This document shows, piece after piece, positions 4,501 through 47,294 of a stretch of DNA of 64,000 nt. The notes below the pieces were generated by a model. The model saw only the letters and a program-made list of their open reading frames with translations. It was not told the origin of the DNA and did not search any database. Each line of letters begins with the position of its first letter. Position 1 is the stretch's first letter. Made by a program: the position numbers and the translations under genes. Source of the stretch: Macrostomum lignano (taxonomy: Eukaryota); assembly GCA_002269645.1 (NCBI GenBank), contig NIVC01001748.1, forward strand, positions 124,001 through 188,000. The letters run 5' to 3'.

Positions 4501-4655
4501 TTTTGAATTGTACATTTTTGGTTTACATTTTGATGTGTATATTTTGTAGTGCACATTGTGTAGTGTACATTTTTAAGTGTACATTGTGTACCTACATCGT
4601 GCTGGATTACATTTAAATCAATCTTTGATGATATGGTGTTTTTTATCTAACAAAG

Positions 4656-5220
4656 CCCGGCAAAAACATTCGCGCCCAGAGTCCAATAGTGACGACCTCG
4701 TTTGCGCTGCCGCAAAGTCACGACGCGAGCTGTTACTATGGAGGCGGCGGCGGCGGCGGCGGCGGAGCCTGCAGCACTCTGCCAAATCCGCGCCATCAAG
4801 TGGCTGGCGAGAGATCTGCTTCTAGAGGAGGAGCGCAGGCTTCGAGACCCGGTCAGGCCAAGAGCGATCAGGTGAACTTCTGGCTCTACCAGATCAAAGA
4901 GGATGCCGCCGCCTCGCCGCAGATGCAGCATCCGAGGTACTATCAGCAGCAGCAGCAGCAGCAGCAGCATCTCAACAATTTTTGTACTATTTCCCGCGGT
5001 CAGCACCAGGTGGTGCACTATGGACAGCCGCAGCACCAGCCGCAGCAGCCAAACCATCAAGACCAGCCTGTCGCTGACGGTGCCCAGTCCGATAGCGGCC
5101 GCGGCTGCTCAGACGAGGATCTGTCCTCGGGTCCGGGCTATCATAACCAGCAAGGTGGTAGCGGGACTGCCGCAGGCGCTGGAAGTCACCACCATCAGCA
5201 GGTGAAGGCTGCCTACAGAG
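4656..5220 (+). CDS. Protocadherin-like cytoplasmic exon
   Basis: caaag| acceptor in phase 0 and |gtgaga donor at 5221 in phase 1; contains DGAQSDSGRGCSDED resembling the protocadherin CM1-type S-DSG-G-SD motif; poly-G and poly-Q tracts. Confidence 0.72.
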
Positions 5221-5267
5221 GTGAGAGTGACTAGCTTTGGTCGTCCGGGCCGCTGGGGTTTAAGTTA

Positions 5268-5923
5268 CACTCAGCAACATTGAAAAGTGTCCACGTCTGC
5301 ACAAAAGGCTACACTAGCTGAACGATTAGGGATTAAAAGGGTTTTAACTATGTTTGGGCCATAGACAATCAAAATAAGGCAACAGAGAATGAACAGAGAA
5401 ACAAGTCCATGCCATTTCCACGCTGTGTACATGTCTAAAGCACAGTCAGTTACAGGTATAGATAGGAACCACGAGCATCCAACAGACCGCTCACTCGTCG
5501 AGGCATTCCCGAACAAGGCGCCGCAGAAAGTCTTGTGGAAGCTGTTGCCACGCGACTGAAAGCGCATTGCGCAGCTGGACCATGTTCTGAGGGGATAGAG
5601 ACTGTTGCACCGAATCGTGCGCTTCAGGGAATCCCACACGTGCTCAATCGGGTTCATATCCGGTGATCTGGATGGCCAACGCAAAGTGCGCCAATCAGTC
5701 ATTTGGCGGACTATCATTGTCACCTGCGTCCAGATGCCTCCAGTGAACTCCTGTACACTCGTTACTGTAACGCTTTTCCCTGTGACACCAGATATCGGTC
5801 TTTACACTTTCCTGTCCTTTTTTGCTCATTTGTCTATGGCCCAAAGCCAATTGGCGAAACCATCGATCGTGCTGCCCATGGACCCTTGGGGCAAGGGTGG
5901 ACACTTTTAAATATTGCTGAGTG
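5268..5923 (-). mobile_element. Internally deleted Tc1/mariner DNA transposon (656 bp, non-autonomous)
   Basis: About 27-bp TIRs (CACTCAGCAACATTGAAAAGTGTCCAC versus rc CACTCAGCAATATTTAAAAGTGTCCAC); TA at 5266-67 and 5924-25; minus strand encodes WPSRSPDMNPIEHVW and a frameshifted Tc1 C-terminus (LRNALSVAWQQLPQDFLRRLV / MPRRV). Confidence 0.9.
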
Positions 5924-6034
5924 TAGTTGGCAGTTATTGTAGTTAGTAGCCAATCGCCTTTTCTTAATGAATAATCACATCGAGCATTGGAATTATTATT
6001 TGAACCAATCATTTCAGCTGCAGTGAAAATTAAC

Positions 6035-7019
6035 TGAAGTAGAATGGTGTTTCTTCCCGGTTTAGCGCCCTTAAGTTTACCTTAAGTCGCGGCCTCTTCT
6101 TCTTGGGAAGTCTTCTCTCAACTCTCAGTAGCGTAGGTAGTGCTGCCACCAGTTCCTTCAGGTCTCGGCCTTCGATGAGGCGAGCTTCCCGTCGGAACGA
6201 AATAAACAAGTCAACGAACTCAGCACAGCGTGCAGATTTGTAGATTAATGAACAAAGCGTCCTGATCAGCAGATCCCCGCCGGGCTCAGGGGTGGCTGGG
6301 AAGGTAGTGTTAGCCTCACTTAGGCTTGGGCTTTAGTGGGGTCTCAGTCAGACCAGTACAAACGGATTCAGTACGCAAAGGGCACTTAGTTAGACACTGA
6401 CGCACACGGGATCTTAGTGAATTCTCCGCAGATAAGAAGCCAATCAATTCCTTGACGGAAACAAGGGGAGAGGGGTCCTATTTATAGCCGGGAAACACCC
6501 ACGCACAAGACCTCGTGACTTGTTCTATTTTTAGAACTGACGTCACTTGAGAGTCTTGGGTAGGGTACAAGCGTGCGGAAGACCTCGTGACTCGTTCTAT
6601 TTTTAGAACTGACGTCACTTGAGGTCTCCGGCCAGAGTACACGCGGCTGTGACTCAGTTGCTATTTTTAGCAACATGAGTCACTCCTCTCCTTAGAGAAG
6701 GGAGGGGTCCGAAAGCACGTGATTCTCCCGGTAAACAGGGCCAACGAGTGCAGTAAACATGTTTACTGCACTTTAGGACTCGAAGAACGCAGAGTCTGTC
6801 ATGTGACTTGCTCACATGACAGAGGAAAACGGGACGGGAACGAAACAGAGACAGCCCACAGCAGAGAAGCTGAGGGCTGAGAACAGAGACGCAGAAGGGC
6901 AGAACAGGCCAAGGGCAGCAACAGACGGGCCAAGGGGGGCGGGCGGGAAGCTGACCAGCGGCAGACAGCAACCCAGGGCGAGGGCGAGGGAGACTGCTGA
7001 CAAAGTGGGACGCCTAACA
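6035..7019 (-). mobile_element. Probable solo LTR (about 985 bp)
   Basis: TG...CA ends; flanks TTAAC and TCAAC (4/5 TSD match); minus-strand TATAAATA at 6479-6486; 45-bp direct repeats with 72-bp period in the putative U3. No internal region to confirm. Confidence 0.45.
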
Positions 7020-7251
7020 TCAACTAGCGGATCACTACATAACCAACACAAATATTCAAAGTCTGTGCATTTTTGTTTTACGATTTTTTCGCACTACATT
7101 TGTACATTTGTACTACCGATTTTGTAAATCAAGTTAGGATTTGAGAAATTTTAATACAGATATCGATCGATATTTGTACTATTTTTGATAAAATACTACA
7201 TACAGTTTGTACAACGTTATTTTTGTAATATACTATAACTATACAACGCAG

Positions 7252-7556
7252 ATCCCCAGCAGCAACAACAGCAGCAGCAGGCGCCAATACGGTTCACCCC
7301 AGTTCCGCAACTGAGCTCAGTGCAAACAAGTCGATCAGCGCCTTTGCCCAGTATTCAAAATCAGCCCCAGCCCCAGCAGCAGCCACAGCACCAGCAGGGA
7401 TCAAAGCCGCCAACCCCGCAGCCTCTGGCAACTGTTCACGCAGCCAGCGCTGGCCACAGCGCCTCCCCTGTGACCGCTGCCTCATCTGCAGCCAATCCAG
7501 CTGACCAGGTGTGCCGGCAGATCGACAACCTGTTCTTCAAGGATATGACTGTTTGA
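7252..7556 (+). CDS. Protocadherin-like terminal exon
   Basis: cgcag| acceptor in phase 1 matches the upstream donor; ends CRQIDNLFFKDMTV*, a PDZ-type C-terminus; followed by about 2.4 kb of AT-rich probable 3' UTR. Confidence 0.72.
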
Positions 7557-10929: not shown

Positions 10930-11336
10930 AAGTTGTTAGTTTGGAAGGTTGTGAGTTTGGAAGATTGTCAGTTTGTGAGGTTGTCAGTTTGGGAGGTTGT
11001 CAGTTTGGAAGATTGTCAGTTTGGGAGGTTGTGAGTTTGGAAGATTGTCAGTTTGGGAGGTTGTGAGTTTGGAAGATTGTCAGTTTGGGAGGTTGTCAGT
11101 TTGGGAGGTTGTCAGTTTGTGAGGTTGTCAGTTTGGAAGATTGTCAGTTTGGGAGGTTGTCAGTTTGTGAGGTTGTCAGTTTGGAAGATTGTCAGTTTGG
11201 GAGGTTGTCAGTTTGTGAGGTTGTCAGTTTGGAAGATTGTCAGTTTGGGAGGTTGTCAGTTTGTGAGGTTGTCAGTTTGGAAGATTGTCAGTTTGGGAGG
11301 TTGTCAGTTTGGGAGGTTGTCAGTTTGGAAGATTGT
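10930..11336. repeat. 16-bp minisatellite (TTGTCAGTTTGGGAGG), left part of array split by LTR element
   Basis: Direct; continues at 15892. Confidence 0.93.
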
Positions 11337-11571
11337 TGTCGTATCGCGTGACTCAGCGGGTGTACATTGAGTACACTCGCTGTTTTATTTTATCGATTGT
11401 CTGACAATGCTTCATTGAGCGTGACTAGTGTGTGTGTTCTTTTAAAACCCTTGTGCTTTTATGCATCAATTATTCTTACGTTCGCTTGTACCAAAAATAT
11501 AAAAGTCGTCTAGTGAGCTCAGAGCTCAATACTTTTTGATTTCTCGCACTAACCACTATAGAGTTGTTTTA
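11337..11571 (+). repeat. 5' LTR of element 1 (235 bp)
   Basis: Matches 15656-15891. Confidence 0.95.
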
Positions 11572-11572
11572 G

Positions 11573-11585
11573 TGGCGACGAGGAT
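11573..11585 (+). promoter_or_regulatory. Primer binding site complementary to tRNA-Ser(GCU) 3' end
   Basis: TGGCGACGAGGAT is the reverse complement of the conserved ...AUCCUCGUCGCCA end of eukaryotic tRNA-Ser(GCU), recalled from knowledge. Confidence 0.8.
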
Positions 11586-11597
11586 TGTGGCTGAGCA

Positions 11598-14500
11598 ATG
11601 CCTAACCACGCAATCGGAGAATATGAGGACTCCGAGGAAACCTGGGATGAGTACCAGGAGCGTCTGGAGCAACATTTCCTGGCACAGGACATCACCGACG
11701 AAAGTAAAAAGAGGGCCACCCTGCTGAGCGTCTGCGGTAGGAAAACCTTCCAGTTGGCCAGAAGCCTCTGCTCTCCAGCCAAAGTCGCGGACAAATCCTA
11801 TGCCGAAATATGCGAGCTGCTGAGCGCTCATTTCAACCCAAGGCCGAGCGAAATCATTCAGAGGTTCCACTTCAATAACCGAGTTCAGCGCCCTGGAGAG
11901 TCGGTGGCAGAGTTCCTTGCGGAGCTGCGGAAGCTGGCGGAGTTCTGCAATTACGGCGGGAGCCTGTCTGACATGCTGCGCGACAGGCTGGTGTGCGGCA
12001 TCGCGGACCAGCAAATCCAGCGCCGGCTCCTGATGGAGGCCGAGCTGACCCTCGATACTGCCAAACAGATCGCGCAAGCGGGCGAGTCAGCAGCCAAAAA
12101 CTGTCAATCGCTGGGCTCAGCAAAACCTGCGGCAGTGACATCGGCATCGTCAGCGACAGAGAGCGACTCCGTGCTTCGAATGGAACGACAGCGACCGCAA
12201 GACAGCCGTCAGTCTGGAACAGAAGGCTGGCGGCGCTGTTTCCGCTGCTTGTCGACTCGCCATCCGGCAGCCAAATGTCCCTTCGCGGACAAACGCTGTT
12301 TCAACTGCAGCAAAACCGGGCACACCGCGAAGGCATGCAAGGCGGTGACACAGCAGCAGCAAATGCACCAGCTGGTTGACCAGCAGCCTTCAGACAGCAG
12401 CTCAGCTCAGGCCGCCGAGCCGCCCAGCCCAGCCGAGGTCGCTTATCCCTTCTACCATCTGGGTGCTGACCGATCGCAGGCCAGGTTTCCTCCAATCGTG
12501 ACCTCTGTCTTCATCGAGGAGAAGCGATTCGAGATGGAGGTGGACACGGGGGCATCCGTATCGCTGATGTCCGAACGTACGTTCAAGGAAAACCTGGGAA
12601 GCCGGATGTCTCTGTCTGCGTCAACGGTTCAGCTCAGTACGTACACCGGTCAAACCGTCCGTGTTCTCGGTCAGCTCTTCGTACGCGTGCGAGCTTCGCA
12701 AGGTTCGGCCGAGGAACAGCTGCCGCTGCTGGTTGTCGCCGGTTCTGGTCCGAGCCTCCTTGGTCGAGATTGGCTACACCGCCTGCGGCTGGACTGGCAA
12801 TCTATCAAGCGGATGGAAGAAGCTGATGCAGCCAAGGAGTTGCTACAGGAGTTCTCAGAAGTCTTCCAAGGTCTGGGCGAGTTCAGCGGCAAGCCGGTGT
12901 CCATCAGTCTGAAGGAGAACGCCAGACCAAGGTTCTATAAGGCGCGGCCGGTGCCGTTTGCGCTGCGCGAGAAGGTTGAGCAGCAGCTGCAGAAGGAAAT
13001 CGACCAAGGAATCCTGGTGCCGGTCAAAAACTCCGACTGGGCGTCCCCGATCGTGCCGGTAATGAAGTCCGACGGCAGCGTGCGCATCTGCGCTGATTTC
13101 AAGCAGTCGGTCAACGCAGCTATCCGGCCTGAGGCTTACCCGCTGCCGAACATCGACGAGCTATTTTCACGCTTGGCTGGCGGTAAGAAGTTCTCAAAAC
13201 TGGATCTGAGCCAGGCATTTTCGCAGCTTCCCCTGGATGAGGATGCTCAAGAGCTCTGTACCATCAACACCTCGCTGGGACTTCTTCGCTACACCCGTCT
13301 GCCTTTCGGCGTGTCGATCGCCCCCAGCGTGTTTCAGCGGGTGATGGACAGCTTACTGCGAGGAATTCCGCACTCTGCATCCTTCATCGATGATGTCATC
13401 ATCACAGGCGAAGACGACGCCAGTCACCTCCGCAACCTGAGAGCAGTTCTGAAGGTCTTCAAGGAGTCCGGGCTGACATGCAAGCTTGAGAAGTGCACCT
13501 TTTTCAAGGACGAAGTCACATACCTAGGCCACCGCATCGACGCCGAAGGGCTGCACCCGCTGGACGATAAGGTTCGAGCTGTGCTGGACGCGCCGGCACC
13601 GACTAACACGACTCAACTGAGGAGCTTCTTGGGCCTCATCAACTACTACGGCAAGTTTTTGCCAAATCTCTCTAGTGTTCTGGCCCCGCTGCACAGGCTC
13701 TTGGAGAAGAACTCAAGGTGGCAGTGGGATCGCAGCGAGGCGGACGCGTTCAGCGCGGCAAAGCAGCTGCTCACGCACCCCAGCGTCCTAGTCCACTATA
13801 ACGCTGCAGAAGAGCTCTACCTGGAGTGCGACGCATCGCAGTACGGGCTCGGTGCCGTCATATTCCACCGTCGGGACGGCATGGACAAGCCGATCGCGTA
13901 CGCTTCGCGCAGCCTCAGCTCAGCAGAGAAAAATTACTGCCAGCTGGAGAAGGAGGCCTTGGCGCTGGTTTTCGGTGTGAAAAAATTCCATCACTATCTG
14001 TTTGGTCGGGAGTTCAACCTGTTGACCGACCACCGGCCGCTTCTCGGCCTTCTAGGACAAGAGCGACCGCTTCCAGCCCTGGCTTCCGGCCGAGTCCAAC
14101 GATGGGCGTTGCTGCTGACCGCGTACCGGTACCGTCTTGTACACCGCAGCGGGGTCTCCATGCTCCGAGCAGACGCCTTAAGCCGCCTTCCTGCATCAGC
14201 TGGCCCTAAGGAAGTTCCGGTGCCTCCAGAAGTCGTGCAAGTGATGGACTGCCTGGACGCCGGGCCGGTGACTTCATCAGACGTGCGCACCTGGTCCCGC
14301 CGCGACCCTACATTGTCACGCGTAATTCTTTACTGTCTCTCGGCCTGGCCAGACCGGGATTCCTGGACTTCCGATTTGGTGCCCTTCGGAAAACGGCACC
14401 AGGAATTGTCAGTTCAAGACGGCTGTGTTCTCTGGGGCAGTCGTGTCGTCATTCCTGAAGTCGGCCAAAGCCGCTTGCTCGACTGCCTGCATGTTGGACA

Positions 14501-15689
14501 CCCTGGAGCATCCCGGATGAAGTCGCTTGCCAGAAGTTACATATGGTGGCCGGCCATGGATCGTGACATTGAGGCCAAGGCAGCAAGCTGCACGGACTGC
14601 CAGAAGCACCAGCGAGCCGGACCAGAAGCTCCGCTGCAGCCATGGCCGCTAACGGCAAGGCCTTGGTCGAGAATCCACGTCGATTTTGCCGGTCCCGTCC
14701 AAGGTCGGATGCTGCTGGTGGTGGTCGACTCCTTCTCAAAGTGGCTCGATGTGTACGTGACGACAGCGACGACGACCTTCGCAACAGTGGAAAAGCTGCG
14801 ACAGAGCTTCAGCACTCATGGCCTACCGGAGACCATCGTCTCGGACAATGGGCCCTGCTTTGCCAGCTTCGAGTTCGACGCCTTTTGTGCCAAGAACGGA
14901 ATTCGGCACATCCGCACGCCACCCTACCACCCGGCTTCCAATGGCCAAGCTGAGCGAGCAGTGCAAACTGTTAAGAACTCCCTGAAGAAGCAGGCCAATG
15001 ACGGCAGCTCCCTGGAGACCCAGCTGGCCAGATTCCTGCTCAGCTACCGTACTACACCGCATCCAACGACGGGAGTGGCACCGTGTGAGCTGCTGATGCA
15101 CCGGACGCTGCGTAGCCTGCTCGACGTACCGAGGCCAGACATCGCCAAGCGAGTTCTCGAGAGCCAGGAAAAGCAGAAGCAGCAGCACGACTCGGGCGCA
15201 CAAAGACGAGTCTTCGAGAAGGGCGAGGCGGTGTTCGTTCAAGACTTTAGCCGCGGGAAAGAGCGAACCTGGACATCGGCTATGGTGGTCGGCAAGGAGG
15301 GCAGCAACTGGTACAAGTGCATTCTGCCGAACAACCGGATGGTGCGGCGGCACACAGAACAGATGCGAATCGACAAGACTTCCCAGCGGCCTGGGCCGCT
15401 GCAGACGAATCCGGAATTTAGCGGTGAGCTCAGGCCTCCACTACCGCAACCGTTGGTTCCGCCGCCACCGCCGCTGCAGCTGCCACCGCCACCGCCACCG
15501 TCGCCGCCGCCGCCGCCGCCAACGCCGCCGCCAACGCCGCCGCCACCGTCGCAGCCTCGACCGCTGCAACTTCCAGATCAAGGACCAGCACAAGCTCTCA
15601 GAAGATCAAGCAGAGCTCGATCGATTCCCGTCCGCCTAAACTACGATGGGAGAGGTGTCGTATCGCGTGACTCAGCGGGTGTACATTGA
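11598..15689 (+). CDS. Gag-Pol polyprotein, single ORF of 1363 aa
   Basis: Two CCHC knuckles (CFRCLSTRHPAAKC, CFNCSKTGHTAKAC); protease VDTGAS; RT FIDD; RNase H CDASQYG; integrase HHCC and DDE (VDFAG/SDNG/AERAV); stop lies 34 bp inside the 3' LTR. Confidence 0.96.
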   Translation: MPNHAIGEYEDSEETWDEYQERLEQHFLAQDITDESKKRATLLSVCGRKTFQLARSLCSPAKVADKSYAEICELLSAHFNPRPSEIIQRFHFNNRVQRPGESVAEFLAELRKLAEFCNYGGSLSDMLRDRLVCGIADQQIQRRLLMEAELTLDTAKQIAQAGESAAKNCQSLGSAKPAAVTSASSATESDSVLRMERQRPQDSRQSGTEGWRRCFRCLSTRHPAAKCPFADKRCFNCSKTGHTAKACKAVTQQQQMHQLVDQQPSDSSSAQAAEPPSPAEVAYPFYHLGADRSQARFPPIVTSVFIEEKRFEMEVDTGASVSLMSERTFKENLGSRMSLSASTVQLSTYTGQTVRVLGQLFVRVRASQGSAEEQLPLLVVAGSGPSLLGRDWLHRLRLDWQSIKRMEEADAAKELLQEFSEVFQGLGEFSGKPVSISLKENARPRFYKARPVPFALREKVEQQLQKEIDQGILVPVKNSDWASPIVPVMKSDGSVRICADFKQSVNAAIRPEAYPLPNIDELFSRLAGGKKFSKLDLSQAFSQLPLDEDAQELCTINTSLGLLRYTRLPFGVSIAPSVFQRVMDSLLRGIPHSASFIDDVIITGEDDASHLRNLRAVLKVFKESGLTCKLEKCTFFKDEVTYLGHRIDAEGLHPLDDKVRAVLDAPAPTNTTQLRSFLGLINYYGKFLPNLSSVLAPLHRLLEKNSRWQWDRSEADAFSAAKQLLTHPSVLVHYNAAEELYLECDASQYGLGAVIFHRRDGMDKPIAYASRSLSSAEKNYCQLEKEALALVFGVKKFHHYLFGREFNLLTDHRPLLGLLGQERPLPALASGRVQRWALLLTAYRYRLVHRSGVSMLRADALSRLPASAGPKEVPVPPEVVQVMDCLDAGPVTSSDVRTWSRRDPTLSRVILYCLSAWPDRDSWTSDLVPFGKRHQELSVQDGCVLWGSRVVIPEVGQSRLLDCLHVGHPGASRMKSLARSYIWWPAMDRDIEAKAASCTDCQKHQRAGPEAPLQPWPLTARPWSRIHVDFAGPVQGRMLLVVVDSFSKWLDVYVTTATTTFATVEKLRQSFSTHGLPETIVSDNGPCFASFEFDAFCAKNGIRHIRTPPYHPASNGQAERAVQTVKNSLKKQANDGSSLETQLARFLLSYRTTPHPTTGVAPCELLMHRTLRSLLDVPRPDIAKRVLESQEKQKQQHDSGAQRRVFEKGEAVFVQDFSRGKERTWTSAMVVGKEGSNWYKCILPNNRMVRRHTEQMRIDKTSQRPGPLQTNPEFSGELRPPLPQPLVPPPPPLQLPPPPPPSPPPPPPTPPPTPPPPSQPRPLQLPDQGPAQALRRSSRARSIPVRLNYDGRGVVSRDSAGVH
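15648..15655 (+). promoter_or_regulatory. Polypurine tract of element 1
   Basis: GGGAGAGG directly before the 3' LTR. Confidence 0.8.
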
Positions 15690-15891
15690 GTACACTCGCT
15701 GTTTTATTTTATCGATTGTCTGACAATGCTTCATTGAGCGTGACTAGTGTGTGTGTTCTTTTAAAACCCTTGTGCTTTTATGCATCAATTATTCTTACGT
15801 TCGCTTGTACCAAAAATATAAAAGTCGTCTAGTGAGCTCAGAGCTCAATACTTTTTGATTTCTCGCACTAACCACTATAGAGTTGTTTTAA
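15656..15891 (+). repeat. 3' LTR of element 1 (236 bp)
   Basis: Matches 5' LTR; followed by TSD ATTGT. Confidence 0.95.
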
Positions 15892-16258
15892 TTGTCAGTT
15901 TGGGAGGTTGTCAGTTTGGGAGGTTGTCAGTTTGGAAGATTGTCAGTTTGTGAGGTTGTCAGTTTGGGAGGTTGTCAGTTTAGGAGGTTGTCAGTTTAGA
16001 AGATTGTCAGTTTAGGAGGTTGTCAGTTTGGAAGATTGTCAGTTTAGAAGATTGTCAGTTTAGGAGGTTGTCAGTTTGGGAGGTTGTCAGTTTGGAAGGT
16101 TGTCAGTTTAGAAGGTTGTCAGTTTGGGAGGTTGTCAGTTTGAGAGGTTGTCAGTTAGGAGGTTGTCAGTTTGGGAGGTTGTCAGTTTGGGAGGTTGTCA
16201 GTTTGGGAGGTTGTCAGTTTGGGAGGTTGTCAGTTTGGGAGGTTGTCAGTTTGGAGGG
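15892..16258. repeat. 16-bp minisatellite, right part of split array
   Basis: Resumes in register after the TSD. Confidence 0.93.
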
Positions 16259-18287: not shown

Positions 18288-18905
18288 AATGTGAGGGAGA
18301 GACGTGAGGGAGAGATGTGAGGGAGACGTGAGGGAGAGATGTGAGGGAGACGTGAGGGAGAGATGTGAGGGAGAGACGTGAGGGAGAGATGTGAGGGAGA
18401 GACGTGAGGGAGACGTGAGGGAGAGACGTGAGGGAGAGACGGAGGGAGAGACGTGAGGGAGAGACGTAAGGGAGACGTGAGAGAGATGTGAGGGAGACGT
18501 AAGTGATAGACTTGAGGGAGAGATGTGAGGGAGAGACGTGAGGGAGACGTGAGGGAGAGACGTGAGGGAGACGTGAGGGAGAGATGTGAGGGAGAGACGT
18601 GAGGGAGAGACGTGAGGGAGAGACGTGAGGGAGAGACGTGAGGGAGACGTGAAGGAGAGACGTGAGGGAGACGTGAGGGAGAGATGTGAGGGAGAGACGT
18701 GAGGGAGAGATGTGAGGGAGAGACGTGAGGGAGACGTGAGGGAGAGACATGAGGGAGAGACGGAGGGAGAGACGTGAGGGAGAGACGTAAGGGAGACGTG
18801 AGAGAGATGTGAGGGAGACGTAAGTGATAGACTTGAGGGAGAGATGTGAGGGAGACGTAAGTGATAGACTTGAGGGAGAGATGTGAGGGAGAGACTTGAG
18901 GGAGA
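18288..18905. repeat. 11/13-bp minisatellite (GTGAGGGAGA(GA)Y), inverted relative of 17415-17660
   Basis: Direct. Confidence 0.9.
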
Positions 18906-19348
18906 CACGTGAGATAGCACAGCAGACACGTGAGGGAGATGTGAAGGAGACGATAGGGAGATATTAATGAGAGATAGCACAGCAGACACATAAGGGAGAT
19001 GAGAAGGAGACGATAGGGAGATATTAATGAGAGATAGCACAGCAGACACGTGAGGGAGATGTGAAGGAGACGATAGGGAGATATTAATGAGAGATAGCAC
19101 AGCAGACACGTGAGGGAGATGTGAAGGAGACGATAGGGAGATATTAATGAGAGACAGCACAGCAGACACGTGAGGGAGATGTGAAGGAGACGATAGGGAG
19201 ATATTAATGAGAGATAGCACAGCAGACACATAAGGGAGATGAGAAGGAGACGATAGGGAGATATTAATGAGAGATAGCACAGCAGACACATAAGGGAGAT
19301 GAGAAGGAGACGATAGGGAGATATTAATGAGAGATAGCACAGCAGACA
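18905..19348. repeat. 60-bp minisatellite
   Basis: Successive 60-nt lines are near-identical. Confidence 0.93.
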
Positions 19349-19555
19349 CGAGAGAAAGCTGCAGGTGGCGTCTGGCAATAAAAGATTGACATGTTTAGCC
19401 ATGTCACGAGGCAGGCTAAGCTAATGTCAATTGTTTAAAGTCAATATAGACATAATCGTGGATTCCGCTGCACCGCTGCAGAAGAGAAAATAAAAGTACA
19501 ATTTGGCATGAATTCTTCAACAGGCCGCCTCCGACTGTCCCTGTGCCCTCTAGCG

Positions 19556-19939: not shown

Positions 19940-19976
19940 ATGAAGATGCTCAGCTGTCTACTGTACTCGGCTTTGG
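19940..19976 (+). CDS. Putative first coding exon of the PP2C/PDP-like gene (MKMLSCLLYSAL)
   Basis: ATG and |gtgagc donor; candidate acceptor at 20803, but that frame does not join the phosphatase frame without a +1 shift. Confidence 0.3.
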
Positions 19977-20019
19977 GTGAGCATGAGCAGATAATTGATA
20001 TTCTTGCTGCGAGGGGTAC

Positions 20020-20660
20020 AGTGGGAGGTAGAGAGAAAGGTAGAGTGGGAGGTAGAGAGAGAGGTAGAGTGGAAGATAGATCGAGAAGTAGATTGGAAGA
20101 TAGAGAGGTAGAGTGAAAAGTAGATAGGTAGATTGGAAGGTAGAAAGGTAGAATGGAAAGTAGATAGGTAGATTGGAAGGTAGAAAGGTAGAGTGTAAAG
20201 TAGATAGGTAGATTGGAAGGTAGAAAGGTAGAGTTGAAAGTAGATAGGTAGATTGGAAAGTAGAGAAGTAGATTGGAAGGTAGAAAGGTAGAGTGGAAAG
20301 TAGATAGGTAGATTGGAAGGTAGAAAGGTAGAGTGTAAAGTAGATAGGTAGATTGGAAGGTAGAAAGGTAGAGTTGAAAGTAGATAGGTAGAGTGGAAAG
20401 TAGAGAAGTAGATTGGACGGTAGAAAGGTAGAGTGGAAAGTAGATAGGTAGATTGGAAGGTAGAAAGGTAGAGTGGAAAGTAGATAGGTAGATTGGAAGG
20501 TAGAAAGGTAGAGTGGAAAGTAGATAGGTAGATTGGAAGGTAGAAAGGTAGAGTGGAAAGTAGATAGGTAGATTGGAAGGTAGAAAGGTAGAGTGGAAAG
20601 TAGATAGGTAGATTGGAAGGTAGAAAGGTAGAGTGGAAAGTAGATAGGTAGGATTGGAAG
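20020..20660. repeat. 40-bp purine-rich minisatellite (TAGAAAGGTAGAGTGGAAAGTAGATAGGTAGATTGGAAGG)
   Basis: Direct. Confidence 0.93.
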
Positions 20661-21070
20661 GTCGAAGACTACAATGACTATAGAGAACATGCTTAGTTCC
20701 TAGAATAAATAGTGAAAGGTTTTGAAACTGAATATCTCAACCTGAAAACATTCAATTAGCCTTCCAACGCCCATCAACCTGTCAATTGTCAAAAAGGCCG
20801 CAGTTACAACCAGCAGCAGAAGCAGGAGCAGAGCGGACCAGCTACGGAGCCCAACTCACCGGCAGCAGCCAGGGCCCGACCCTCAGACTGCTCAAAGCCG
20901 AGCAGCAGGACTCGAGCCCAGTCTCTACCGCAGAACTGCATCAGCCAGCACCGCGTCCTCACTAATTCGGCTAACGCTACTGCTTCTGGAAGCAGCAATG
21001 ACAGCCACTGCCCGGCTCTGGCGAAGAGCTGCACCCAAACGGCTCTCCGTCAGCTTCGCCACCGTCGCCC

Positions 21071-21760
21071 ATGTCGGCGGCTCCCAGATGGCCGCCTGTC
21101 GGCTTGCCGATTCAGCAGGAGACCACCGACTGCGGCAGGGTGCACTCGGCCTGCCGGCCAGCAGCGTCGGGCGGCAGCGTCTCCCCAGACTCCGTTGCCT
21201 CATCGGAATGGACAGCGGCCAGACTGACCCGAAGCTCATCGACATTCGCCGGTCTATTTGTCGGCGTCGGCGGTCGGCAGTGCGCCGCGGCGGTGGCGGC
21301 TCTGGCGGCGGACTACGCCGCGGCCGAGTTGGCTTCGAATTCGCCGATTGAAGCTCGCGACGCTCGGAGAAGTCTGCTCAGACAGTTCGACTGGAGCGAC
21401 AACGAGGACTGCTGCAGTAATAGTCACAGTCCGGGCGAAGACGCTGCTGCCGTCGATGGCAACGCGGACGTCCCGGCGGTGTCCCTTCGGCGGCCCGGCA
21501 GCGGCCAGTTCGTGCCCGAGGACCTGGTCTCCATGGCCAAGGCCGACTGGCTGACCGACAGGCTGCTGCGGGCGGCAAATTCCCAGCCCGACGCCGATTG
21601 CACAACTGCGGACCGACTGTGCCAGGCCATGATCAGGCTGGATGCCGATCTGTGCGGCGCGGCTGGGCAGTCGGCCTGGACTCTGCGGGCAGCCACCACG
21701 GGTGCCGTGGGATCCGCCTGTCTGATCTCTGGCGACGGGAGCCGGTGCTGCTTGATGCAG
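21071..21760 (+). CDS. PP2C-family, pyruvate dehydrogenase phosphatase-like protein, N-terminal half (probable pseudophosphatase); true start uncertain
   Basis: GLFVGVGGRQCAAAV aligns with PDP GVFDGHAGCACSQAV; LCQAMIRLDADL with LINAFKRLDNDI; TTGAVGSAC with FSGATAC; donor |gtaaag at 21761. Confidence 0.7.
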
Positions 21761-22012
21761 GTAAAGATTTTTGACTAGATTGGCTGAGTAAAGTTATTAA
21801 ACACTACATATCGGTAGATAGAAATCTTTTATGCATTAAAAATTGTTGAAATTAAAAAATCTCATTATAAAACTTACTATCGCTACATATCGGTAGATAG
21901 TAGTTATTTTACTTATTTGACAACTACCAGATTATAAATATCATCATAGAAAGTTATTTACCCAAAATATCGGCAGATTTGAGAAAAATGATACGAAATT
22001 GAACAATTTCAG

Positions 22013-22651
22013 ATCGGCAACAGCGCTGCCGTGATTGGCTCTCGAAGTGCCCCCATTGCCGCTGCCTCCGACGCCGAAGATGGCACTGACAGCGTCAACA
22101 ATGTCCAGACGGCCTGGCGATGGCGGCAGCCGCTCGCCCAGCAGACCATTGAGAATGGTCGGGAAGTTCGACGAGTTCTGGCCGAGCACCCGGCATCCGA
22201 GCGCGGCTCCGTGTTCGCCGGCAACCGCCTCCTCGGCCGCATGGAGGCGCTCAGAGCCTTCGGCCTGGTGCAGTTGAAGTGGCCGAAGGAGCGCCTGAAC
22301 TCTTGGACTTCTTGGCCAGCCGGCCAGTCGCCACCGAGCTGCGAGACGCCGCCCTACCTGACCGCCAGACCGGAAGTGATCGAGGTGGGCATCGACCCGG
22401 CCGCCGACCGCTTTATCATCCTGGGAAGCCCCGGCCTGTGGGACCGGCTGTCTCCCCAGCAGGCGGTGGCCTGCGTTGGCGGCCAGCTGTTGGCGGCGCA
22501 GTCCCAGGGTTCGAATCCTAGCGGAGAAAATCTTGCGGCCACTTTGGTGCAGCTGGCCGAGAGCTGCGGGCACAGGGACTCGGCGGCCGGCTTTAACGAG
22601 GCCGACTGGGAGAACGAGGAGGTGTCCGCCTGTATCGTGCTGCTGCACTGA
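22013..22651 (+). CDS. PDP-like protein, C-terminal exon
   Basis: ttcag| acceptor in phase 0; REVRRVLAEHP..ERGSVFAGNRLLG..ALRAFG..LKW..TPPYLTARPEV..DRFIILGSPGLW follow PDP1 motif order. Confidence 0.8.
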   Translation: MGNSAAVIGSRSAPIAAASDAEDGTDSVNNVQTAWRWRQPLAQQTIENGREVRRVLAEHPASERGSVFAGNRLLGRMEALRAFGLVQLKWPKERLNSWTSWPAGQSPPSCETPPYLTARPEVIEVGIDPAADRFIILGSPGLWDRLSPQQAVACVGGQLLAAQSQGSNPSGENLAATLVQLAESCGHRDSAAGFNEADWENEEVSACIVLLH

Positions 22652-22697
22652 CTGACTGTGCAACCCTGACCTCAGCTGGCTCGGTGTTTCTCTGTGT

Positions 22698-22716
22698 GTC
22701 TGTCTGTCTGTCTGTG

Positions 22717-22795
<79 letters not shown>

Positions 22796-22800
22796 ATGTG

Positions 22801-22869
<69 letters not shown>

Positions 22870-22870
22870 G
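22698..22870. repeat. (CTGT)n microsatellite
   Basis: Direct. Confidence 0.95.
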
Positions 22871-23839
22871 CCTTGCTGTATAAAGCATTCTGTTTCACCG
22901 TCTGTTTGCCTGTAAATCAAGCCAATGCAGGCAGCCTGTTTCATTCTGTGTCCTCAGTCAAGTGCTTGTCGTATCTTACGTTGGAATTTCTGAGCGTCTT
23001 GAACTGCATGCAAGCCCAGAGCTACCTCAGAAATCAATGATGAAGCTCCCATTACCAGTCTCACACTCGTATCCAGTCAGTTCATTCATGGAGGCTCTAA
23101 TTTTATTGCTCATGTTGTATTATTAATAGTCATGTTGCCATTTTTTCAGTTCATTCACTGCTTGGCACCGTAACTTTTCCAGTCTTGTACACAATTTCGA
23201 CTTCGACTTGTTGCTCATTCATCAAGTCTGCCTGGTTGTTTCAAGAAATTAATTGATCTATTTTTTCCATTCTACGCCCGCTGTACCAACCAAGATTTTT
23301 CGCAATCATTGTAAATATTAATTTGATTTTCTGATTTTCTGTATATTTTTCCGTATGGAAGCATTCAATGCTAAATCAGATTTGAAATTCTGTCTTACAG
23401 AAAGTGCAATGTGCTCAAAATATTAATGATAAGCGCGCACAAACACGCATGGGTATACACAATCACAATTATTGAAAAATATATATTATTGAACGATGGG
23501 AATTCTTTTGTAAAAATAAAATATCGATTTTATAAATCGAATGCTGTTTATTTTATTTATTTCGTTGTATAATTGAAAGCTTTCTGTGACTGTATTGTAT
23601 AACTTGTGAGAAAGGGACAGCAGATGGAGTTGAGAGGCTGGACACACTGACAAAAAGCTAAGGCAGTTGAAGCGTTTACGAGCGGTACAGATGAGGCATG
23701 TTCGCAGCCAAGTGTTTCCAGAGAGTCTGGGAGAGTACACGTACGCAAGGAGTTGTGCAAATAAACTTACTTTTGAACAATACATATATTATTGAAAATA
23801 ATAACTATGTATGCTTCGTACTCAACAGTCACAAGGCAG

Positions 23840-24600
23840 CGGAGAAGAGAGTAGAGAAAGAGCAGAGAGGGGAGCGGAGAAGGGAGAAGAGAAGTGTTTG
23901 GAAAAGGAAGCGGAGTAGAGCGCGGATGAGGAAGAGAAGGCAGCAGAGGAGAGAGCGGAGAAGGGAGAAGAGAAGGGGCGGAGGAGAGAGCGGAGGAGAG
24001 AGCGGAGGAGAGAGCGGAGGAGAGAGCGGAGAAGGCAGCGGAGGAGAGAGCGGAGAAGGGAGAAGAGAAAGGGCGGAGGAGAGAGCGGAGGATCGCGGAG
24101 AAGGGAGAAGAGAAGGGGGCGGAGAAGAAGGGAGAAGAGAAGGGGCGGAGAAGAGAGCGGAGGAGAGAGCGAAGAAGGGAGAAGAGAAGGGGCGGAGGAG
24201 AGAGCGGAGAAGGGAGAAGAGAAGGGGCGGAGGAGAGAGCGGAGGAGAGAGCGGAGGAGAGAGCGGAGGAGAGAGCGGAGGAGAGAGCGAGAGAAGGCAG
24301 CGGGAGGAGAGAGCGGAGAAGGGAGAAGAGAAGCGGAGGAGAGAGCGGAGGAGAGAGCAGGGGAGAGAGCGGAGAAGGGAGAAGAGAAGGGGGCGGAGAG
24401 AGAGCGGAGAGAGAGCGGAGAAGGGAGAAGAGAAGGGGCGGAGAAGAGAGCGGAGGAGAGAACGAAGAAGAGAAAAGAGAAGGCAGCGGACGAGAGAGCG
24501 GAGAAGGGAGAAGAGAAGGGGTGGAGGAGAGAGCGGAGAAGGGAAAAGAGAAGGGGCGGAGGAGAGAGCGGAGGAGAGAGCGGAGAAGGGAAAAGAGAAA
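23840..24600. repeat. GA-rich degenerate minisatellite
   Basis: GGAGAGAGCGGA / GAAGGGAGAAGAG modules. Confidence 0.85.
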
Positions 24601-25169
24601 GGGTCATTAGTGAATGAGTGCAGAGCTAGGTGCACTGACACAGGACAAGAGCAAATACCTGTAAAACTAATCACACGGCTAAGCACAGACAGAACGCAAG
24701 AAGCAGGTACAATCAGCTCATTAGTAAAGTGACGCAGTTCGCAAGTGTCACGTGGTCGATTCTGTTAAGTAATTGGCGCACAATGCACTAAGAAAATTTT
24801 CTAATCTCACTCTTAGTACATATCCCTATATATAGATAAAAGATAAAATAATTATTAGTAAGACAATTACCAAGTTATCAGACGCCTCGCTCTATACTGT
24901 AAAACGCATTTTAATCAGTATTTCTGAATAGAAAAAAATCTGTAGCTTGTATAACTAATTCTTTAAATTATGTACACTGGTTTGTGTGTGTGCCGGGGCG
25001 TGTCTTTTGCGACTATGGTAATTCTACGGTAACTATGGTAACTACGGTAACTATGGTAACATGGTAACGTTTTTAAAAGCAAAAGCTAAAAGTTGTATAA
25101 CGAGTGAATAAAGTTGCTCATCCTTAACTGGCTGGCGCTATTTCATGGATTGCGCTACTTCATGGATGA

Positions 25170-27387
25170 TGCTATTTGGTGTGGCGCTATTTAGTGTGGT
25201 GCTATTTAGTGTGGTGCTATTTAGTGTGGTGCTATTTAGTGTGGTGCTATTTAGTGTGGTGCTATTTAGTGTGGCGCTATTTAGTGTGGTGCTATTTAGT
25301 GTGGTGCTATTTAGTGTGGCGCTATTTAGTGTGGTGCTATTTAGTGTGGCGCTATTTAGTGTGGCGCTATTTAGTGTGGTGCTATTTAGTGTGGTGCTAT
25401 TTAGTGTGGCGCTATTTAGTGTGCGTGCTATTTAGTGTGGTGCTATTTAGTGTGGCGCTATTTAGTGTGGTGCTATTTAGTGTGGTGCTATTTAGTGTGG
25501 CGCTATTTAGTGTGGCGCTATTTAGTGTGGTGCTATTTAGTGTGGTGCTATTTAGTGTGGCGCTATTTAGTGTGGTGCTATTTAGTGTGGTGCTATTTAG
25601 TGTGGCGCTATTTAGTGTGGTCTAATTTAGTGTGGCGCTATTTAGTGTGGCGCTATTTAGTGTGGTGCTATTTAGTGTGGTGCTATTTAGTGTGGGCCTA
25701 TTTAGTGTGGCGCTATTTAGTGTGGCGCTATTTAGTGTGGCGCTATTTAGTGTGGCGCTATTTAGTGTGGCGCTATTTAGTGTCGCTCTATTTAGTGTGG
25801 TGCTATTTAGTGTGGCGCTATTTAGTGTGGCGCTATTTAGTGTGGTGCTATTTAGTGTGGCGCTATTTAGTGTGGCGCTATTTAGTGTGGCACTATTTAG
25901 TGTGGCACTATTTAGTGTGGTGCTATTTCATAGGTGGCGCTATTTAGTGTGGCGCTATTTAGTGTGGCGCTATTTAGTGTGGCGCTATTTAGTGTGGCGC
26001 TATTTAGTGTGGCGCCTATTTCATAGGTGGCGCTATTTAGTGTGGTGCAATTTAGTGTGGTGCTATTTAGTGTGGCGCTATTTAGTGTGGCACTATTTAG
26101 TGTGGCGCTATTTCATAGGTGGCGCTATTTAGTGTGGCGCTATTTAGTGTGGCGCTATTTAGTGTGGCGCTATTTAGGTTGGCGCTATTCGGTGTGGTGT
26201 TATTTAGTGTGGCGTAATTTAGTGTGGCGCTATTTCATAGGTGGCGCTATTTAGTGTGGTGCTATTTAGTGTGGCGCTATTTAGTGTGGCGCTATTCGGT
26301 GTGGCGCTATTTAGTGTCGCTCTATTTAGTGTGGTGCTATTTAGTGTGGCGCTATTTAGTGTGGCGCTATTTAGTGTGGCGCTATTTAGTGTGGTGCTAT
26401 TTAGTGTGGTGCTATTTAGTGTGGTGCTATTTAGTGTGGCGCTATTCGGTGTGGCGCTATTTAGTGTCGCTCTATTTAGTGTGGCGCTATTTAGTGTGGC
26501 GCTATTTAGTGTGGCGCTATTTAGTGTGGCGCTATTTAGTGTGGTGCTATTTAGTGTGGTGCTATTTAGTGTGGCGCTATTCGGTGTGGCGCTATTTAGT
26601 GTCGCGCTATTCGGATGGCGCTATTTAGTGTTGCTCTATTTAGTGTGGCGCTATTTAGTGTGGCGCTATTCGGTGTTGCGCTATTTAGTGTTGCTCTATT
26701 TAGTGTGGCGCTATTTAGTGTGGCGCTATTCGGTGTGGCGCTATTTAGTGTTGCTCTATTTAGTGTGGCGCTATTTAGTGTGGCGCTATTTAGTGTGGCG
26801 CTATTTAGTGTTGCTCTATTTAGTGTGGCGCTATTTAGTGTGGTGCTATTTAGTGTGGCGCTATTCGGTGTGGCGCTATTTAGTGTCGCGCTATTTAGTG
26901 TGGAGCTATTTCATAGATGGTGTTATTTAGTGTGGTGCTATTTAGTGTGGTGCTATTTAGTGTGGTGCTATTTAGTGTGGTGCTATTCGGTGTGGCGCTA
27001 TTTAGTGTCGCGCTATTTAGTGTGGCGCTATTTAGTGTGCGCTATTTAGTGTGGCGCTATTTAGTGTGGCGCTATTTAGTGTGGCGCTATTTCGGTGTGG
27101 CGCTATTTAGTGTTGCTCTATTTAGTGTGGCGCTATTTAGTGTGGCGCTATTCGGTGTGGCGCTATTTAGTGTTGCTCTATTTAGTGTGGCGCTATTTAG
27201 TGTGGCGCTATTCGGTGTGGCGCTATTTAGTGTTGCTCTATTTAGTGTGGCGCTATTTAGTGTGGCGCTATTTAGTGTGGCGCTATTTAGTGTGGTGCTA
27301 TTTAGTGTGGCGCTATTTAGTGTCGCTCTATTTAGTGTGGCGCTATTTAGTGTGGCGCTATTTAGTGTGGCGCTATTTAGTGTGGCG
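25170..27387. repeat. 15-bp minisatellite (GTGGCGCTATTTAGT)
   Basis: Direct; about 145 units. Confidence 0.96.
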
Positions 27388-47035: not shown

Positions 47036-47281
47036 TGTAGTGACTTGGTTTGTGTTGTGTGGGGTGCTGGGGGTTGCTGCGTACACTTTACCGTCGTACC
47101 CTTTAACTCTCTCCTTCGCTTGTTCTTTTGTGCGTACGTGCACGTGACTAATATGTCTATTTTACAGTCCCCAAATTATTGATCGGTTAAAATACTATTT
47201 CGACAAATACATATATGAATGATTTTATCATGCTATCGCATAAGCATCTTTCTGCCACGCAAACTAAGTGAAGTCTTTACA
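47036..47281 (+). repeat. 5' LTR of element 2
   Basis: Identical to 51249-51494 by inspection. Confidence 0.95.
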
Positions 47282-47282
47282 G

Positions 47283-47293
47283 TGGCGACGAGG
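47283..47293 (+). promoter_or_regulatory. PBS, tRNA-Ser(GCU) type
   Basis: TGGCGACGAGG, with the gag ATG 1 nt downstream. Confidence 0.78.
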
Positions 47294-47294
47294 C

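What the first reader, a model, noticed from the sequence alone, without database searches (positions are those of the whole stretch)
21071..22651. PDP-like PP2C that appears to lack every metal-binding aspartate (candidate pseudophosphatase)
Seen, by manual alignment to remembered PDP1 motifs: ED becomes EW (least certain), FDGH becomes FVGV, GDS becomes GNS, DH becomes QQ, RAFGD becomes RAFGL, TDGLW becomes SPGLW, and DDIT becomes EEVS. Structural motifs (RLDxD, EHP, RLLG, LKW, TPPYLTAxPEV) and the intron are kept with an open frame. Known: PPM phosphatases need these Asp residues to bind Mg/Mn. Inference: a conserved catalytically dead scaffold or substrate trap, perhaps regulating pyruvate dehydrogenase; TAB1 is a precedent for a PP2C-fold pseudophosphatase.
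Basis: partly seen in the sequence, partly recalled or inferred. Interest (0 to 1): 0.7.

Follow-up and report, generated by a model that had tools for sequence, protein, structure and literature searches.

The report
Catalytically dead flatworm PDP-like phosphatase
This flatworm (Macrostomum lignano) gene is a diverged extra copy of pyruvate dehydrogenase phosphatase that keeps the enzyme's fold but has lost every residue needed to hold its catalytic metals, so it is very probably a selected, non-catalytic "pseudophosphatase" of unknown role: a modest addition to a known class.

Summary
Window 21071-22651 is the annotated two-exon CDS BOX15_Mlig026859g1 (PAA64467.1, 442 aa, "hypothetical protein") of Macrostomum lignano contig NIVC01001748.1. 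It is a PP2C-fold protein whose best sequence and predicted-structure matches are PDP1.

In an alignment with 106 PDP relatives it has no Asp or His at any of the 8 catalytic or metal-site columns (S/W, V, V, N, L, P, E, E). It keeps 31 of the 37 other columns that are at least 90% conserved (Fisher p = 1.4e-5). No relative lacks more than three.

It is not a decaying pseudogene. Three genomic copies share all the substitutions and have intact frames with no CDS indels. They differ by 11 synonymous and 6 non-synonymous changes (omega about 0.19, p = 8e-4). All three are in an annotation built only from RNA-seq.

M. lignano also has a canonical PDP with an intact site, so this is an extra paralogue. 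The "intron kept" claim fails, because the canonical gene has no intron there. A role in PDH regulation, mitochondrial targeting and the true N-terminus are untested. This copy carries a 1-nt deletion that cuts off the N-terminal extension seen in both sister copies.

It is a new member of the known PPM pseudophosphatase class (TAB1, PHLPP). Interest is moderate to low.

The parts
19940..19976 (+). 5' exon with an ATG (MKMLSCLLYSAL-G). It is the CDS start in the two sister copies' annotations. The donor G|GTGAG follows at 19977.
   Evidence: P0001 and P0314 begin MKMLSCLLYSALG|RSYNQ. The same sequence and splice sites are present in the window.
19977..20796 (+). 5' intron (GT...AG) that contains a 40-nt tandem array (20058-20666).
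20797..21070 (+). Segment that encodes a 91-codon low-complexity N-terminal extension in the sister copies. In this window a 1-nt deletion in a C run (CCC at 21031-21033 against CCCC) puts it out of frame. The upstream ORF then ends after 155 codons, and the PP2C-like ORF can only start at ATG 21071.
   Evidence: The three differences between the sister copies inside the extension are all synonymous.
21071..21760 (+). Coding exon, aa 1-230. It includes SSEW (21200-21211, in place of the ED motif), FVGVGG (21257-21274, in place of FDGHGG) and RLDAD (21635-21649).
21761..22012 (+). Phase-0 GT-AG intron, 26% GC, with internal repeats. It is spliced out in the transcript-derived annotation. The three copies differ here by indels, including an internal duplication of roughly 250 nt in L002.
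   Evidence: P0001, P0314 and P0315 read CCLMQ|IGNS across the junction.
22013..22651 (+). Coding exon, aa 231-442 plus the TGA stop. Altered motifs are GNS (22016-22024), QQ (22139-22144), RAFGL (22253-22267), SPGLWD (22427-22444) and NEEVS (22613-22627). Retained motifs are EHP (22184-22192), RLLG (22226-22237), LKW (22274-22282) and TPPYLTARPEV (22346-22378).

Best explanation
The locus is one of three near-identical copies of a transcribed M. lignano gene. It descends from pyruvate dehydrogenase phosphatase (PDP, PPM/PP2C family) but is a pseudophosphatase.

The PP2C beta-sandwich and the PDP-type flap are kept. Every side chain that builds the binuclear Mn/Mg centre is replaced: the equivalents of PPM1A D38, D60, D239 and D282, the third-metal or structural Asp of GDS and RAFGD, and the general-acid His of DGH. 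Several replacements cannot ligate a metal at all (Val, Leu, Pro). It therefore cannot hydrolyse phospho-serine by the PPM mechanism. This step is an inference from established PPM enzymology; the residue states themselves are shown.

Selection still maintains the protein. It most likely acts by binding rather than catalysis, through surfaces it retains from PDP (the flap segment TPPYLTARPEV and RLLG...RAFG...LKW). Its partner is unknown. Modulating or competing with the canonical PDP or the PDH complex is the obvious candidate but is pure inference.

The canonical, intact PDP coexists in the same genome, so PDH dephosphorylation does not depend on this gene. The gene lacks all three introns of the canonical PDP gene and has one of its own. 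This suggests origin as a retrocopy followed by fast divergence.
For: Identity and fold:
- Pfam PP2C hit.
- PDP1 is the best PDB sequence hit.
- The AF2 model (pLDDT 69.5, pTM 0.71; core blocks 84-92) matches PDP1 structures 6v0t, 3mq3 and 2pnq at E 1e-17 to 1e-16 and TM 0.6-0.7, against 1e-8 to 1e-7 for all other PP2Cs including TAB1.

Selective loss of the site: 0 of 8 catalytic columns are kept against 31 of 37 other conserved columns, p = 1.4e-5.

Not an artefact: three loci (window, L001, L002) share all the substitutions.

Constraint:
- 11 synonymous against 6 non-synonymous differences among the copies; omega about 0.19, binomial p = 7.8e-4.
- In aa 46-442 the counts are 8 against 2; omega about 0.085, p = 4.8e-4.
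- No indels in 1326 nt of CDS, but several in the 252-nt intron.
- Zero stops in frame, against 3-10 in the other five frames; GC3 is 0.78 against 0.26-0.40 in the flanking non-coding DNA.

Transcription and splicing: the GenBank annotation of this assembly is built only from RNA-seq transcript assemblies plus TransDecoder (PMC5730564). It lists all three copies with the intron removed.

Extra paralogue: the canonical M. lignano PDP (P0021, BOX15_Mlig030750g1, plus two more copies) has all 8 residues intact.

Origin: NJ places the candidate with the flatworm PDPs in 268 of 500 bootstraps, on a branch about 0.5 substitutions per site longer than the canonical PDP's. The intron positions differ from the canonical gene.

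Enzymology: mutation of any metal-coordinating residue abolishes PPM activity (review PMC13358185).
Against: - Constraint is measured only among copies that are about 99% identical (17 substitutions in all). No orthologue from another species could be examined.
- Expression is inferred from how the annotation was made. No read counts or expression tables were found.
- The N-terminus is unstable among copies: a frameshifting 1-nt deletion here and Met to Lys at codon 1 in L001. A decaying gene would look the same.
- Two Glu (E432, E433) sit where the last Asp pair was, so residual binding of a single metal cannot be formally excluded.
- No activity, localisation or partner data exist.
- The PDP1-specific insert thought to take the lipoyl group (PDP1c residues 98-151, PMC12146199) corresponds to the least conserved, low-pLDDT part of this protein (aa about 90-175). 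That weakens a PDH-complex docking role.
Confidence: 0.68

Rival explanations
1. It is an expressed but functionless duplicate, a retrocopy on its way to becoming a pseudogene. The open frame and low dN/dS among copies would then reflect the youth of the genome duplication, or gene conversion, rather than selection on the protein.
For: - Very long branch.
- No orthologue outside M. lignano.
- The N-terminal region differs between copies by a frameshift and a lost ATG.
- GC3 of 0.78 is lower than the 0.94 of the canonical PDP exon.
- Two long low-confidence segments in the model.
Against: - The protein has diverged to about 30% identity from every PDP yet has no stop or frameshift in 442 codons in any of three copies.
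- 84% of the non-catalytic conserved columns survive. A sequence drifting neutrally that far would not keep them.
- The 11:6 synonymous to non-synonymous ratio departs from neutrality (p = 8e-4).
- Indels accumulate in the intron but not in the CDS.
Confidence: 0.17
2. It is still an enzyme. It would use either a rebuilt metal site (E46, N233, E432, E433, D374) or a different chemistry on the PP2C scaffold.
For: - Two Glu replace the last Asp pair, and D374 of the LWD motif is kept.
- Precedents exist for PP2C folds with non-phosphatase chemistry, for example SidD de-AMPylation (cited in PMC13358185).
Against: - The two central ligands (PPM1A D60 and D239 equivalents) are Val and Pro, and the general-acid His is Val.
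- Single mutations at these sites abolish PPM activity.
- No compensating acidic residues were seen at neighbouring aligned columns.
Confidence: 0.05
3. It is an alignment, annotation or assembly artefact. The true gene would have the Asp residues in another exon or frame.
For: - Default MAFFT misaligned the C-terminus.
- The older ML2-assembly proteins of this gene are full of frame errors (P0002, P0003).
Against: - All motifs lie in two continuous ORFs with their conserved neighbours in register (FxGxGG, GxS, RAFGx, xGLWD).
- Three independent loci agree.
- tblastn with canonical PDPs finds nothing else in the window.
- HMMER, L-INS-i and the AF2 topology give the same equivalences.
Confidence: 0.01

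Closest known systems
PDP1/PDP2, the catalytic subunits of pyruvate dehydrogenase phosphatase (PPM family, EC 3.1.3.43), including M. lignano's own canonical PDP (BOX15_Mlig030750g1)
   Same: - Best sequence and predicted-structure match.
- PP2C beta-sandwich.
- PDP-specific motifs EHP, RLLG, RAFG-, KW, TPPYLTAxPEV and GLWD.
- The flatworm-type short C-terminal region that ends ...VLLH.
   Different: - All metal-ligand Asp residues and the catalytic His are replaced.
- About 30% identity only.
- The insert after the DGH helix has diverged.
- No clear mitochondrial presequence.
- Different intron positions.
TAB1 (TAK1-binding protein 1), a PP2C-fold pseudophosphatase
   Same: A PPM fold that has lost metal-binding residues and works, in TAB1's case, as a binding scaffold through non-catalytic surfaces. 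It serves as a functional analogy.
   Different: Not an orthologue. TAB1 structures match at Foldseek E about 1e-7, like any PP2C, against 1e-17 for PDP1. There is no TAB1 hit in the sequence search at E up to 1. TAB1 is pan-metazoan, whereas this gene is known only from M. lignano.
PHLPP1/PHLPP2, and the PP2C domain of fungal Cyr1, argued to be PPM pseudophosphatases (PMC13358185; bioRxiv 10.1101/2024.12.03.625870)
   Same: An independent loss of metal-coordinating residues in a PPM domain that is nevertheless retained by selection.
   Different: They belong to a different PPM subfamily, are multidomain proteins and lost activity long ago. Here a single-domain, lineage-restricted PDP paralogue sits next to an intact parent gene.

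Membership tests
PPM / PP2C fold (Pfam PF00481) | Significant match to the family profile | tested here: met
   50.6 bits against a gathering score of 20.3, E 2.8e-13, aa 209-419.
PPM / PP2C fold (Pfam PF00481) | PP2C beta-sandwich architecture | tested here: met
   AF2 model with pTM 0.71. 103 PDB matches at E up to 1e-3; all 50 listed are PP2C-fold proteins, with PDP1 on top. This is a prediction, not an experiment.
PDP subfamily (pyruvate dehydrogenase phosphatase) | Closest relatives are PDPs and the PDP-specific motifs are present | tested here: met
   The top hits named by their sources are PDPs, and the other top hits carry the PDP motifs. TPPYLTARPEV, EHP, RLLG and LKW are present. NJ places it with the flatworm PDPs in 54% of bootstraps, which is weak support.
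PDP subfamily (pyruvate dehydrogenase phosphatase) | Binuclear Mg/Mn centre: Asp of ED, DGH, DG(L/I)W and (R)DD/DN, plus the His of DGH | tested here: not met
   The residues are S/W, V, P, E/E and V. The Asp of GDS and RAFGD are N and L.
PDP subfamily (pyruvate dehydrogenase phosphatase) | Mitochondrial matrix targeting | tested here: inconclusive
   No targeting predictor was available. By eye, the short form (MSAAPRWPPVGLPIQQETTDC...) has acidic residues early. The long form (MKMLSCLLYSALGRSY...) is only weakly presequence-like. The canonical P0021 has a classic Arg-rich presequence.
PDP subfamily (pyruvate dehydrogenase phosphatase) | Dephosphorylates PDH E1alpha and docks on the E2 lipoyl domain | not testable with these tools
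   This needs biochemistry.
PPM-type pseudophosphatase (class of TAB1 and PHLPP) | Phosphatase fold with essential catalytic residues missing | tested here: met
   The criterion is as stated in PMC13358185.
PPM-type pseudophosphatase (class of TAB1 and PHLPP) | A maintained gene rather than a pseudogene: transcribed, intact and under purifying selection | tested here: met
   Omega about 0.19 (p = 8e-4) from 17 substitutions among three copies; intact frames; RNA-seq-derived annotation. Power is limited and there is no cross-species test.
PPM-type pseudophosphatase (class of TAB1 and PHLPP) | No phosphatase activity in vitro | not testable with these tools
   This needs recombinant protein assays.
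TAB1 orthologue | TAB1 is the best match | tested here: not met
   PDP1 is the best match by ten orders of magnitude in E-value.

The most novel reading that the evidence does not exclude
The dead PDP paralogue is imported into mitochondria and binds the pyruvate dehydrogenase complex or the active PDP, or competes for the E2 lipoyl-domain docking site. It would then add a non-catalytic, pseudoenzyme layer to control of PDH phosphorylation in this regenerating flatworm. No such mode of PDC regulation has been described in any animal.
Probability: 0.1. Interest if true: 0.6.

Novelty: new member of a known kind. Interest (0 to 1): 0.35.

Why it matters
Pseudoenzymes in the PPM family (TAB1 and, more recently, PHLPP) show that a dead phosphatase fold can become a signalling scaffold. 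I found no description of a PDP-derived example. Two literature searches for PPM or PP2C pseudophosphatases returned none, and the gene is only annotated as a "hypothetical protein".

If it acts on the PDH complex, it would be a new kind of regulator of a central metabolic switch. M. lignano offers transgenesis (PMC5730564) and, from my own knowledge, RNAi, so this could be tested.

If it acts elsewhere, it is a clean, recent case of a metabolic phosphatase turned into a binding protein while the intact parent is still present for comparison. Either way its reach is limited. It is so far a single-species gene without functional data.

Tried and rejected
1. Default MAFFT left the C-terminus unaligned. 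L-INS-i and the AF2 topology resolve NEEVS as the equivalent of RDDIT. The alternative 'GHRDS' (D417), which the end of the Pfam match suggests, was rejected because no beta-strand follows it.
2. I searched with the top non-self hit P0006 hoping it was the worm's canonical PDP. It is arthropod-like, so the search was wasted. The canonical PDP was then recognised among the representatives (P0021) and confirmed by cluster look-up.
3. Cross-species dN/dS could not be done. No orthologue exists in the 15-billion-protein collection. A control search with the canonical PDP shows that the collection has no close relative of M. lignano at all (next hit 36-42% identity). Absence of orthologues therefore says nothing about other Macrostomum species.
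4. Expression tables gave nothing. The gene ids were not found in full texts or in the supplements of two M. lignano transcriptome papers.
5. The PDP1 structure papers (PMC1994205, PMC7336360) are not held. PPM1A and PDP1 residue roles therefore rest on general knowledge and on two reviews.
6. 'Intron kept' is rejected.
7. The first NJ bootstrap run timed out and was repeated with 38 taxa.
8. A TAB1 relationship is rejected.

Full report
**What the window is**

The 64-kb window is identical to part of contig NIVC01001748.1 of the Macrostomum lignano Mlig_3_7 assembly (GCA_002269645.1). Window position 1 corresponds to record position 124001.

The finding's coordinates, 21071-22651, are exactly the annotated CDS of BOX15_Mlig026859g1 (PAA64467.1, 442 aa, "hypothetical protein"; UniProt calls it a "PPM-type phosphatase domain-containing protein").

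The gene model I built from the sequence translates to that protein:
- exon 21071-21760;
- GT-AG intron 21761-22012;
- exon 22013-22651.

**Checking the observation**

The protein matches Pfam PP2C (PF00481, 50.6 bits, E 2.8e-13). Its best solved relatives by sequence are rat and bovine PDP1 (2pnq, 3mq3; E about 4e-17).

An exhaustive HMMER search of 1.84 billion representative proteins found 802 relatives. Only M. lignano's own versions score below 1e-30. The next hits, at about 1e-24, carry the PDP motifs, and those with a source name are called PDP.

I aligned the protein with 106 of these relatives using L-INS-i and read the catalytic columns:

| Family motif | Family residue | Candidate |
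|---|---|---|
| ED | Asp (98 of 106) | S45, or W47 with a two-residue shift |
| DGH | Asp | V64 |
| DGH | His | V66 |
| GD(S/C) | Asp | N233 |
| RAFGD | Asp | L315 |
| DGLW | Asp (106 of 106) | P370 |
| RDD | Asp, Asp | E432, E433 |

That column is only D or E in 90 of 106 sequences, and Q is common at the second position, so it carries little weight.

The loss is selective:
- Of the 45 columns that are at least 90% conserved in the family, the candidate keeps 31 of the 37 non-catalytic ones.
- It keeps 0 of the 8 catalytic ones (Fisher p = 1.4e-5).
- Fragments aside, no other sequence in the set is changed at more than three of the eight.

Several replacements need two nucleotide changes (Asp to Leu, Asp to Pro, His to Val). 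The site has therefore been free to drift for a long time.

**Fold**

The AlphaFold2 model, built on a 41-sequence alignment, has pTM 0.71 and mean pLDDT 69.5. The beta-sandwich core scores 84-92. Confidence is low only at the N-terminus (1-42), at 110-132 and at 418-432.

Foldseek against the PDB puts the three PDP1 structures first, at E 1e-17 to 1e-16 and TM 0.6-0.7. All other PP2Cs, TAB1 included, score 1e-8 to 1e-7.

The model's last strand (437-441) follows NEEVS, as the last PP2C strand follows (R)DDIT. This supports the L-INS-i equivalence rather than the default-MAFFT gap.

**Is it a live gene?**

The assembly holds three copies:
- this one;
- BOX15_Mlig012261g1 (L001, NIVC01000850);
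- BOX15_Mlig008876g1 (L002, NIVC01000399).

L001 is syntenic with the window over more than 25 kb. This fits the known large-scale duplication in this worm's genome (PMC5730564). All three copies carry the same dead site.

The evidence for constraint is as follows:
- Over the 1326-nt CDS the copies differ by 11 synonymous and 6 non-synonymous substitutions and by no indel. With 339.5 synonymous and 986.5 non-synonymous sites, omega is about 0.19 (binomial p = 7.8e-4).
- For residues 46-442 the counts are 8 and 2, giving omega of about 0.085 (p = 4.8e-4).
- The 252-nt intron has several indels between copies, including an internal duplication of roughly 250 nt in L002.
- The coding frame has no stop, while the other five frames have 3-10.
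- GC3 is 0.78, against 0.26 in the intron and 0.37-0.40 in other flanking non-coding DNA.

The GenBank annotation of Mlig_3_7 was made only from RNA-seq transcript assemblies (StringTie/TACO, TBONE, TransDecoder; PMC5730564). The three entries, each with the intron spliced out, are therefore indirect evidence of transcription and splicing.

I found no expression values.

Together this argues against an ordinary pseudogene. The test rests on 17 substitutions between very similar copies.

**Relation to the real PDP**

M. lignano has a canonical PDP (P0021, BOX15_Mlig030750g1, plus two further copies) with all eight catalytic residues intact. The candidate is therefore an additional paralogue, not the worm's only PDP.

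- It is 30% identical to that PDP, no closer than to PDPs of other phyla.
- It shares the short flatworm-type C-terminal region and the ...LLH ending.
- It joins the flatworm PDPs in 268 of 500 NJ bootstraps, on a branch about 0.5 substitutions per site longer.
- The canonical gene has at least three introns, near codons 92/93, 181-192 and 355-369. It has none at the site of the candidate's intron (codon 230/231, equivalent to 255/256).
- The candidate has none of the canonical introns.

A retrocopy origin with a later-acquired intron is plausible but unproven.

No orthologue was found outside M. lignano. A control search with the canonical PDP also finds nothing between 42% and 100% identity except M. 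lignano entries. The collections simply lack close relatives, so the age and spread of the gene within Macrostomum remain open.

**The N-terminus**

Both sister copies are annotated as 546 aa. They have a 5' exon (window 19940-19976, MKMLSCLLYSAL-G), a GT-AG intron (19977-20796) that contains a 40-mer array, and then a 91-codon low-complexity extension that runs into the PP2C-like ORF.

The three nucleotide differences between the sister copies in that extension are all synonymous. This hints that the extension is coding.

In the window copy a 1-nt deletion in a C run (21031-21033) breaks this frame. The upstream ORF ends after 155 codons, and the annotated protein starts at the internal ATG 21071. 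In L001 that ATG is AAG.

The window copy is thus N-terminally truncated, or poorly translated, or carries a homopolymer assembly error. Which start is used, and whether either form is imported into mitochondria, could not be tested.

**Mechanism**

What is shown: the fold prediction, the residue states, an intact and constrained ORF, and an intact parent gene.

What follows from established PPM enzymology (Das et al. 1996 for PPM1A, from my own knowledge; review PMC13358185): without the Asp ligands the binuclear metal centre cannot form. Single mutations at these positions already abolish activity. The protein is therefore not a PPM phosphatase.

What is inferred: it acts by binding, as TAB1 does, probably through the retained flap-region surfaces.

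A role at the PDH complex is possible but unsupported. The region corresponding to the PDP1-specific insert proposed to hold the lipoyl group (PDP1c residues 98-151; PMC12146199) is the most diverged and least confidently modelled part.

**Comparison with what is known, and verdict**

PPM-fold pseudophosphatases are an established class: TAB1, and by recent argument PHLPP1/2 and the Cyr1 PP2C domain.

Two literature searches for PPM or PP2C pseudophosphatases returned nothing on a PDP-derived one. The gene carries no functional annotation.

I file it as a new member of a known kind.
- Confidence that it is a selected, catalytically dead PDP paralogue: about 0.68.
- That it is a functionless expressed duplicate: about 0.17.
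- That it retains some catalytic activity: about 0.05.
- Interest: 0.35.

Noticed in passing
window 11598-15689 (+), within about 11336-15892: There is an intact 1363-aa gag-pol ORF of a Ty3/gypsy-type LTR retrotransposon (gag, aspartyl protease, RT, RNase H, integrase). The stretch of roughly 4.5 kb has no counterpart in the syntenic sister copy L001, so it is an insertion specific to this copy.
   Followed up: partly
window 47268-51157 (+): A second gypsy-type element has protease and RT-RNaseH-integrase split over two overlapping ORFs, so its frame is broken.
   Followed up: no
window 21031-21033: The C run is CCC here but CCCC in both sister copies. This 1-nt difference throws the 104-codon N-terminal extension out of frame in this copy only. 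It may be a real disabling mutation or a homopolymer assembly error.
   Followed up: partly
window 21761-22012; L002 intron: The candidate's only internal intron is 26% GC and holds repeats of CTACATATCGGTAGATAG. In L002 it carries an internal duplication of roughly 250 nt. The canonical PDP gene has no intron at this position. A gained intron is possible, perhaps from a repeat or transposon insertion.
   Followed up: partly
window 18291-19354, 20058-20666, 22691-22870, 23833-24603, 25171-27387: Dense tandem arrays surround the gene: a 13-mer and a 60-mer upstream, a 40-mer x15 inside the 5' intron, (TCTG)45 just after the stop codon, a purine-rich 12/24-mer array, and a 15-mer x147 of 2.2 kb. 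They create long spurious ORFs on both strands.
   Followed up: no
P0020 (Glossina PDP1-like), P0113 (Halyomorpha PDP2), P0015 (Artemia), P0110 (Podila): A few other PDP-family proteins have partial losses at catalytic columns, for example Glossina with GD to GG and RALGD to RALGN. They may be partly degenerate PDP paralogues in insects. I did not check them for annotation errors.
   Followed up: no
L001 1-1842, matching window about 4538-7500: The upstream neighbour in the sister locus is a large cadherin/FAT-like gene (Pfam Cadherin). The ML2-assembly protein P0005 ('Protein grainyhead') is an artefactual fusion that ends in this gene's N-terminal extension.
   Followed up: no
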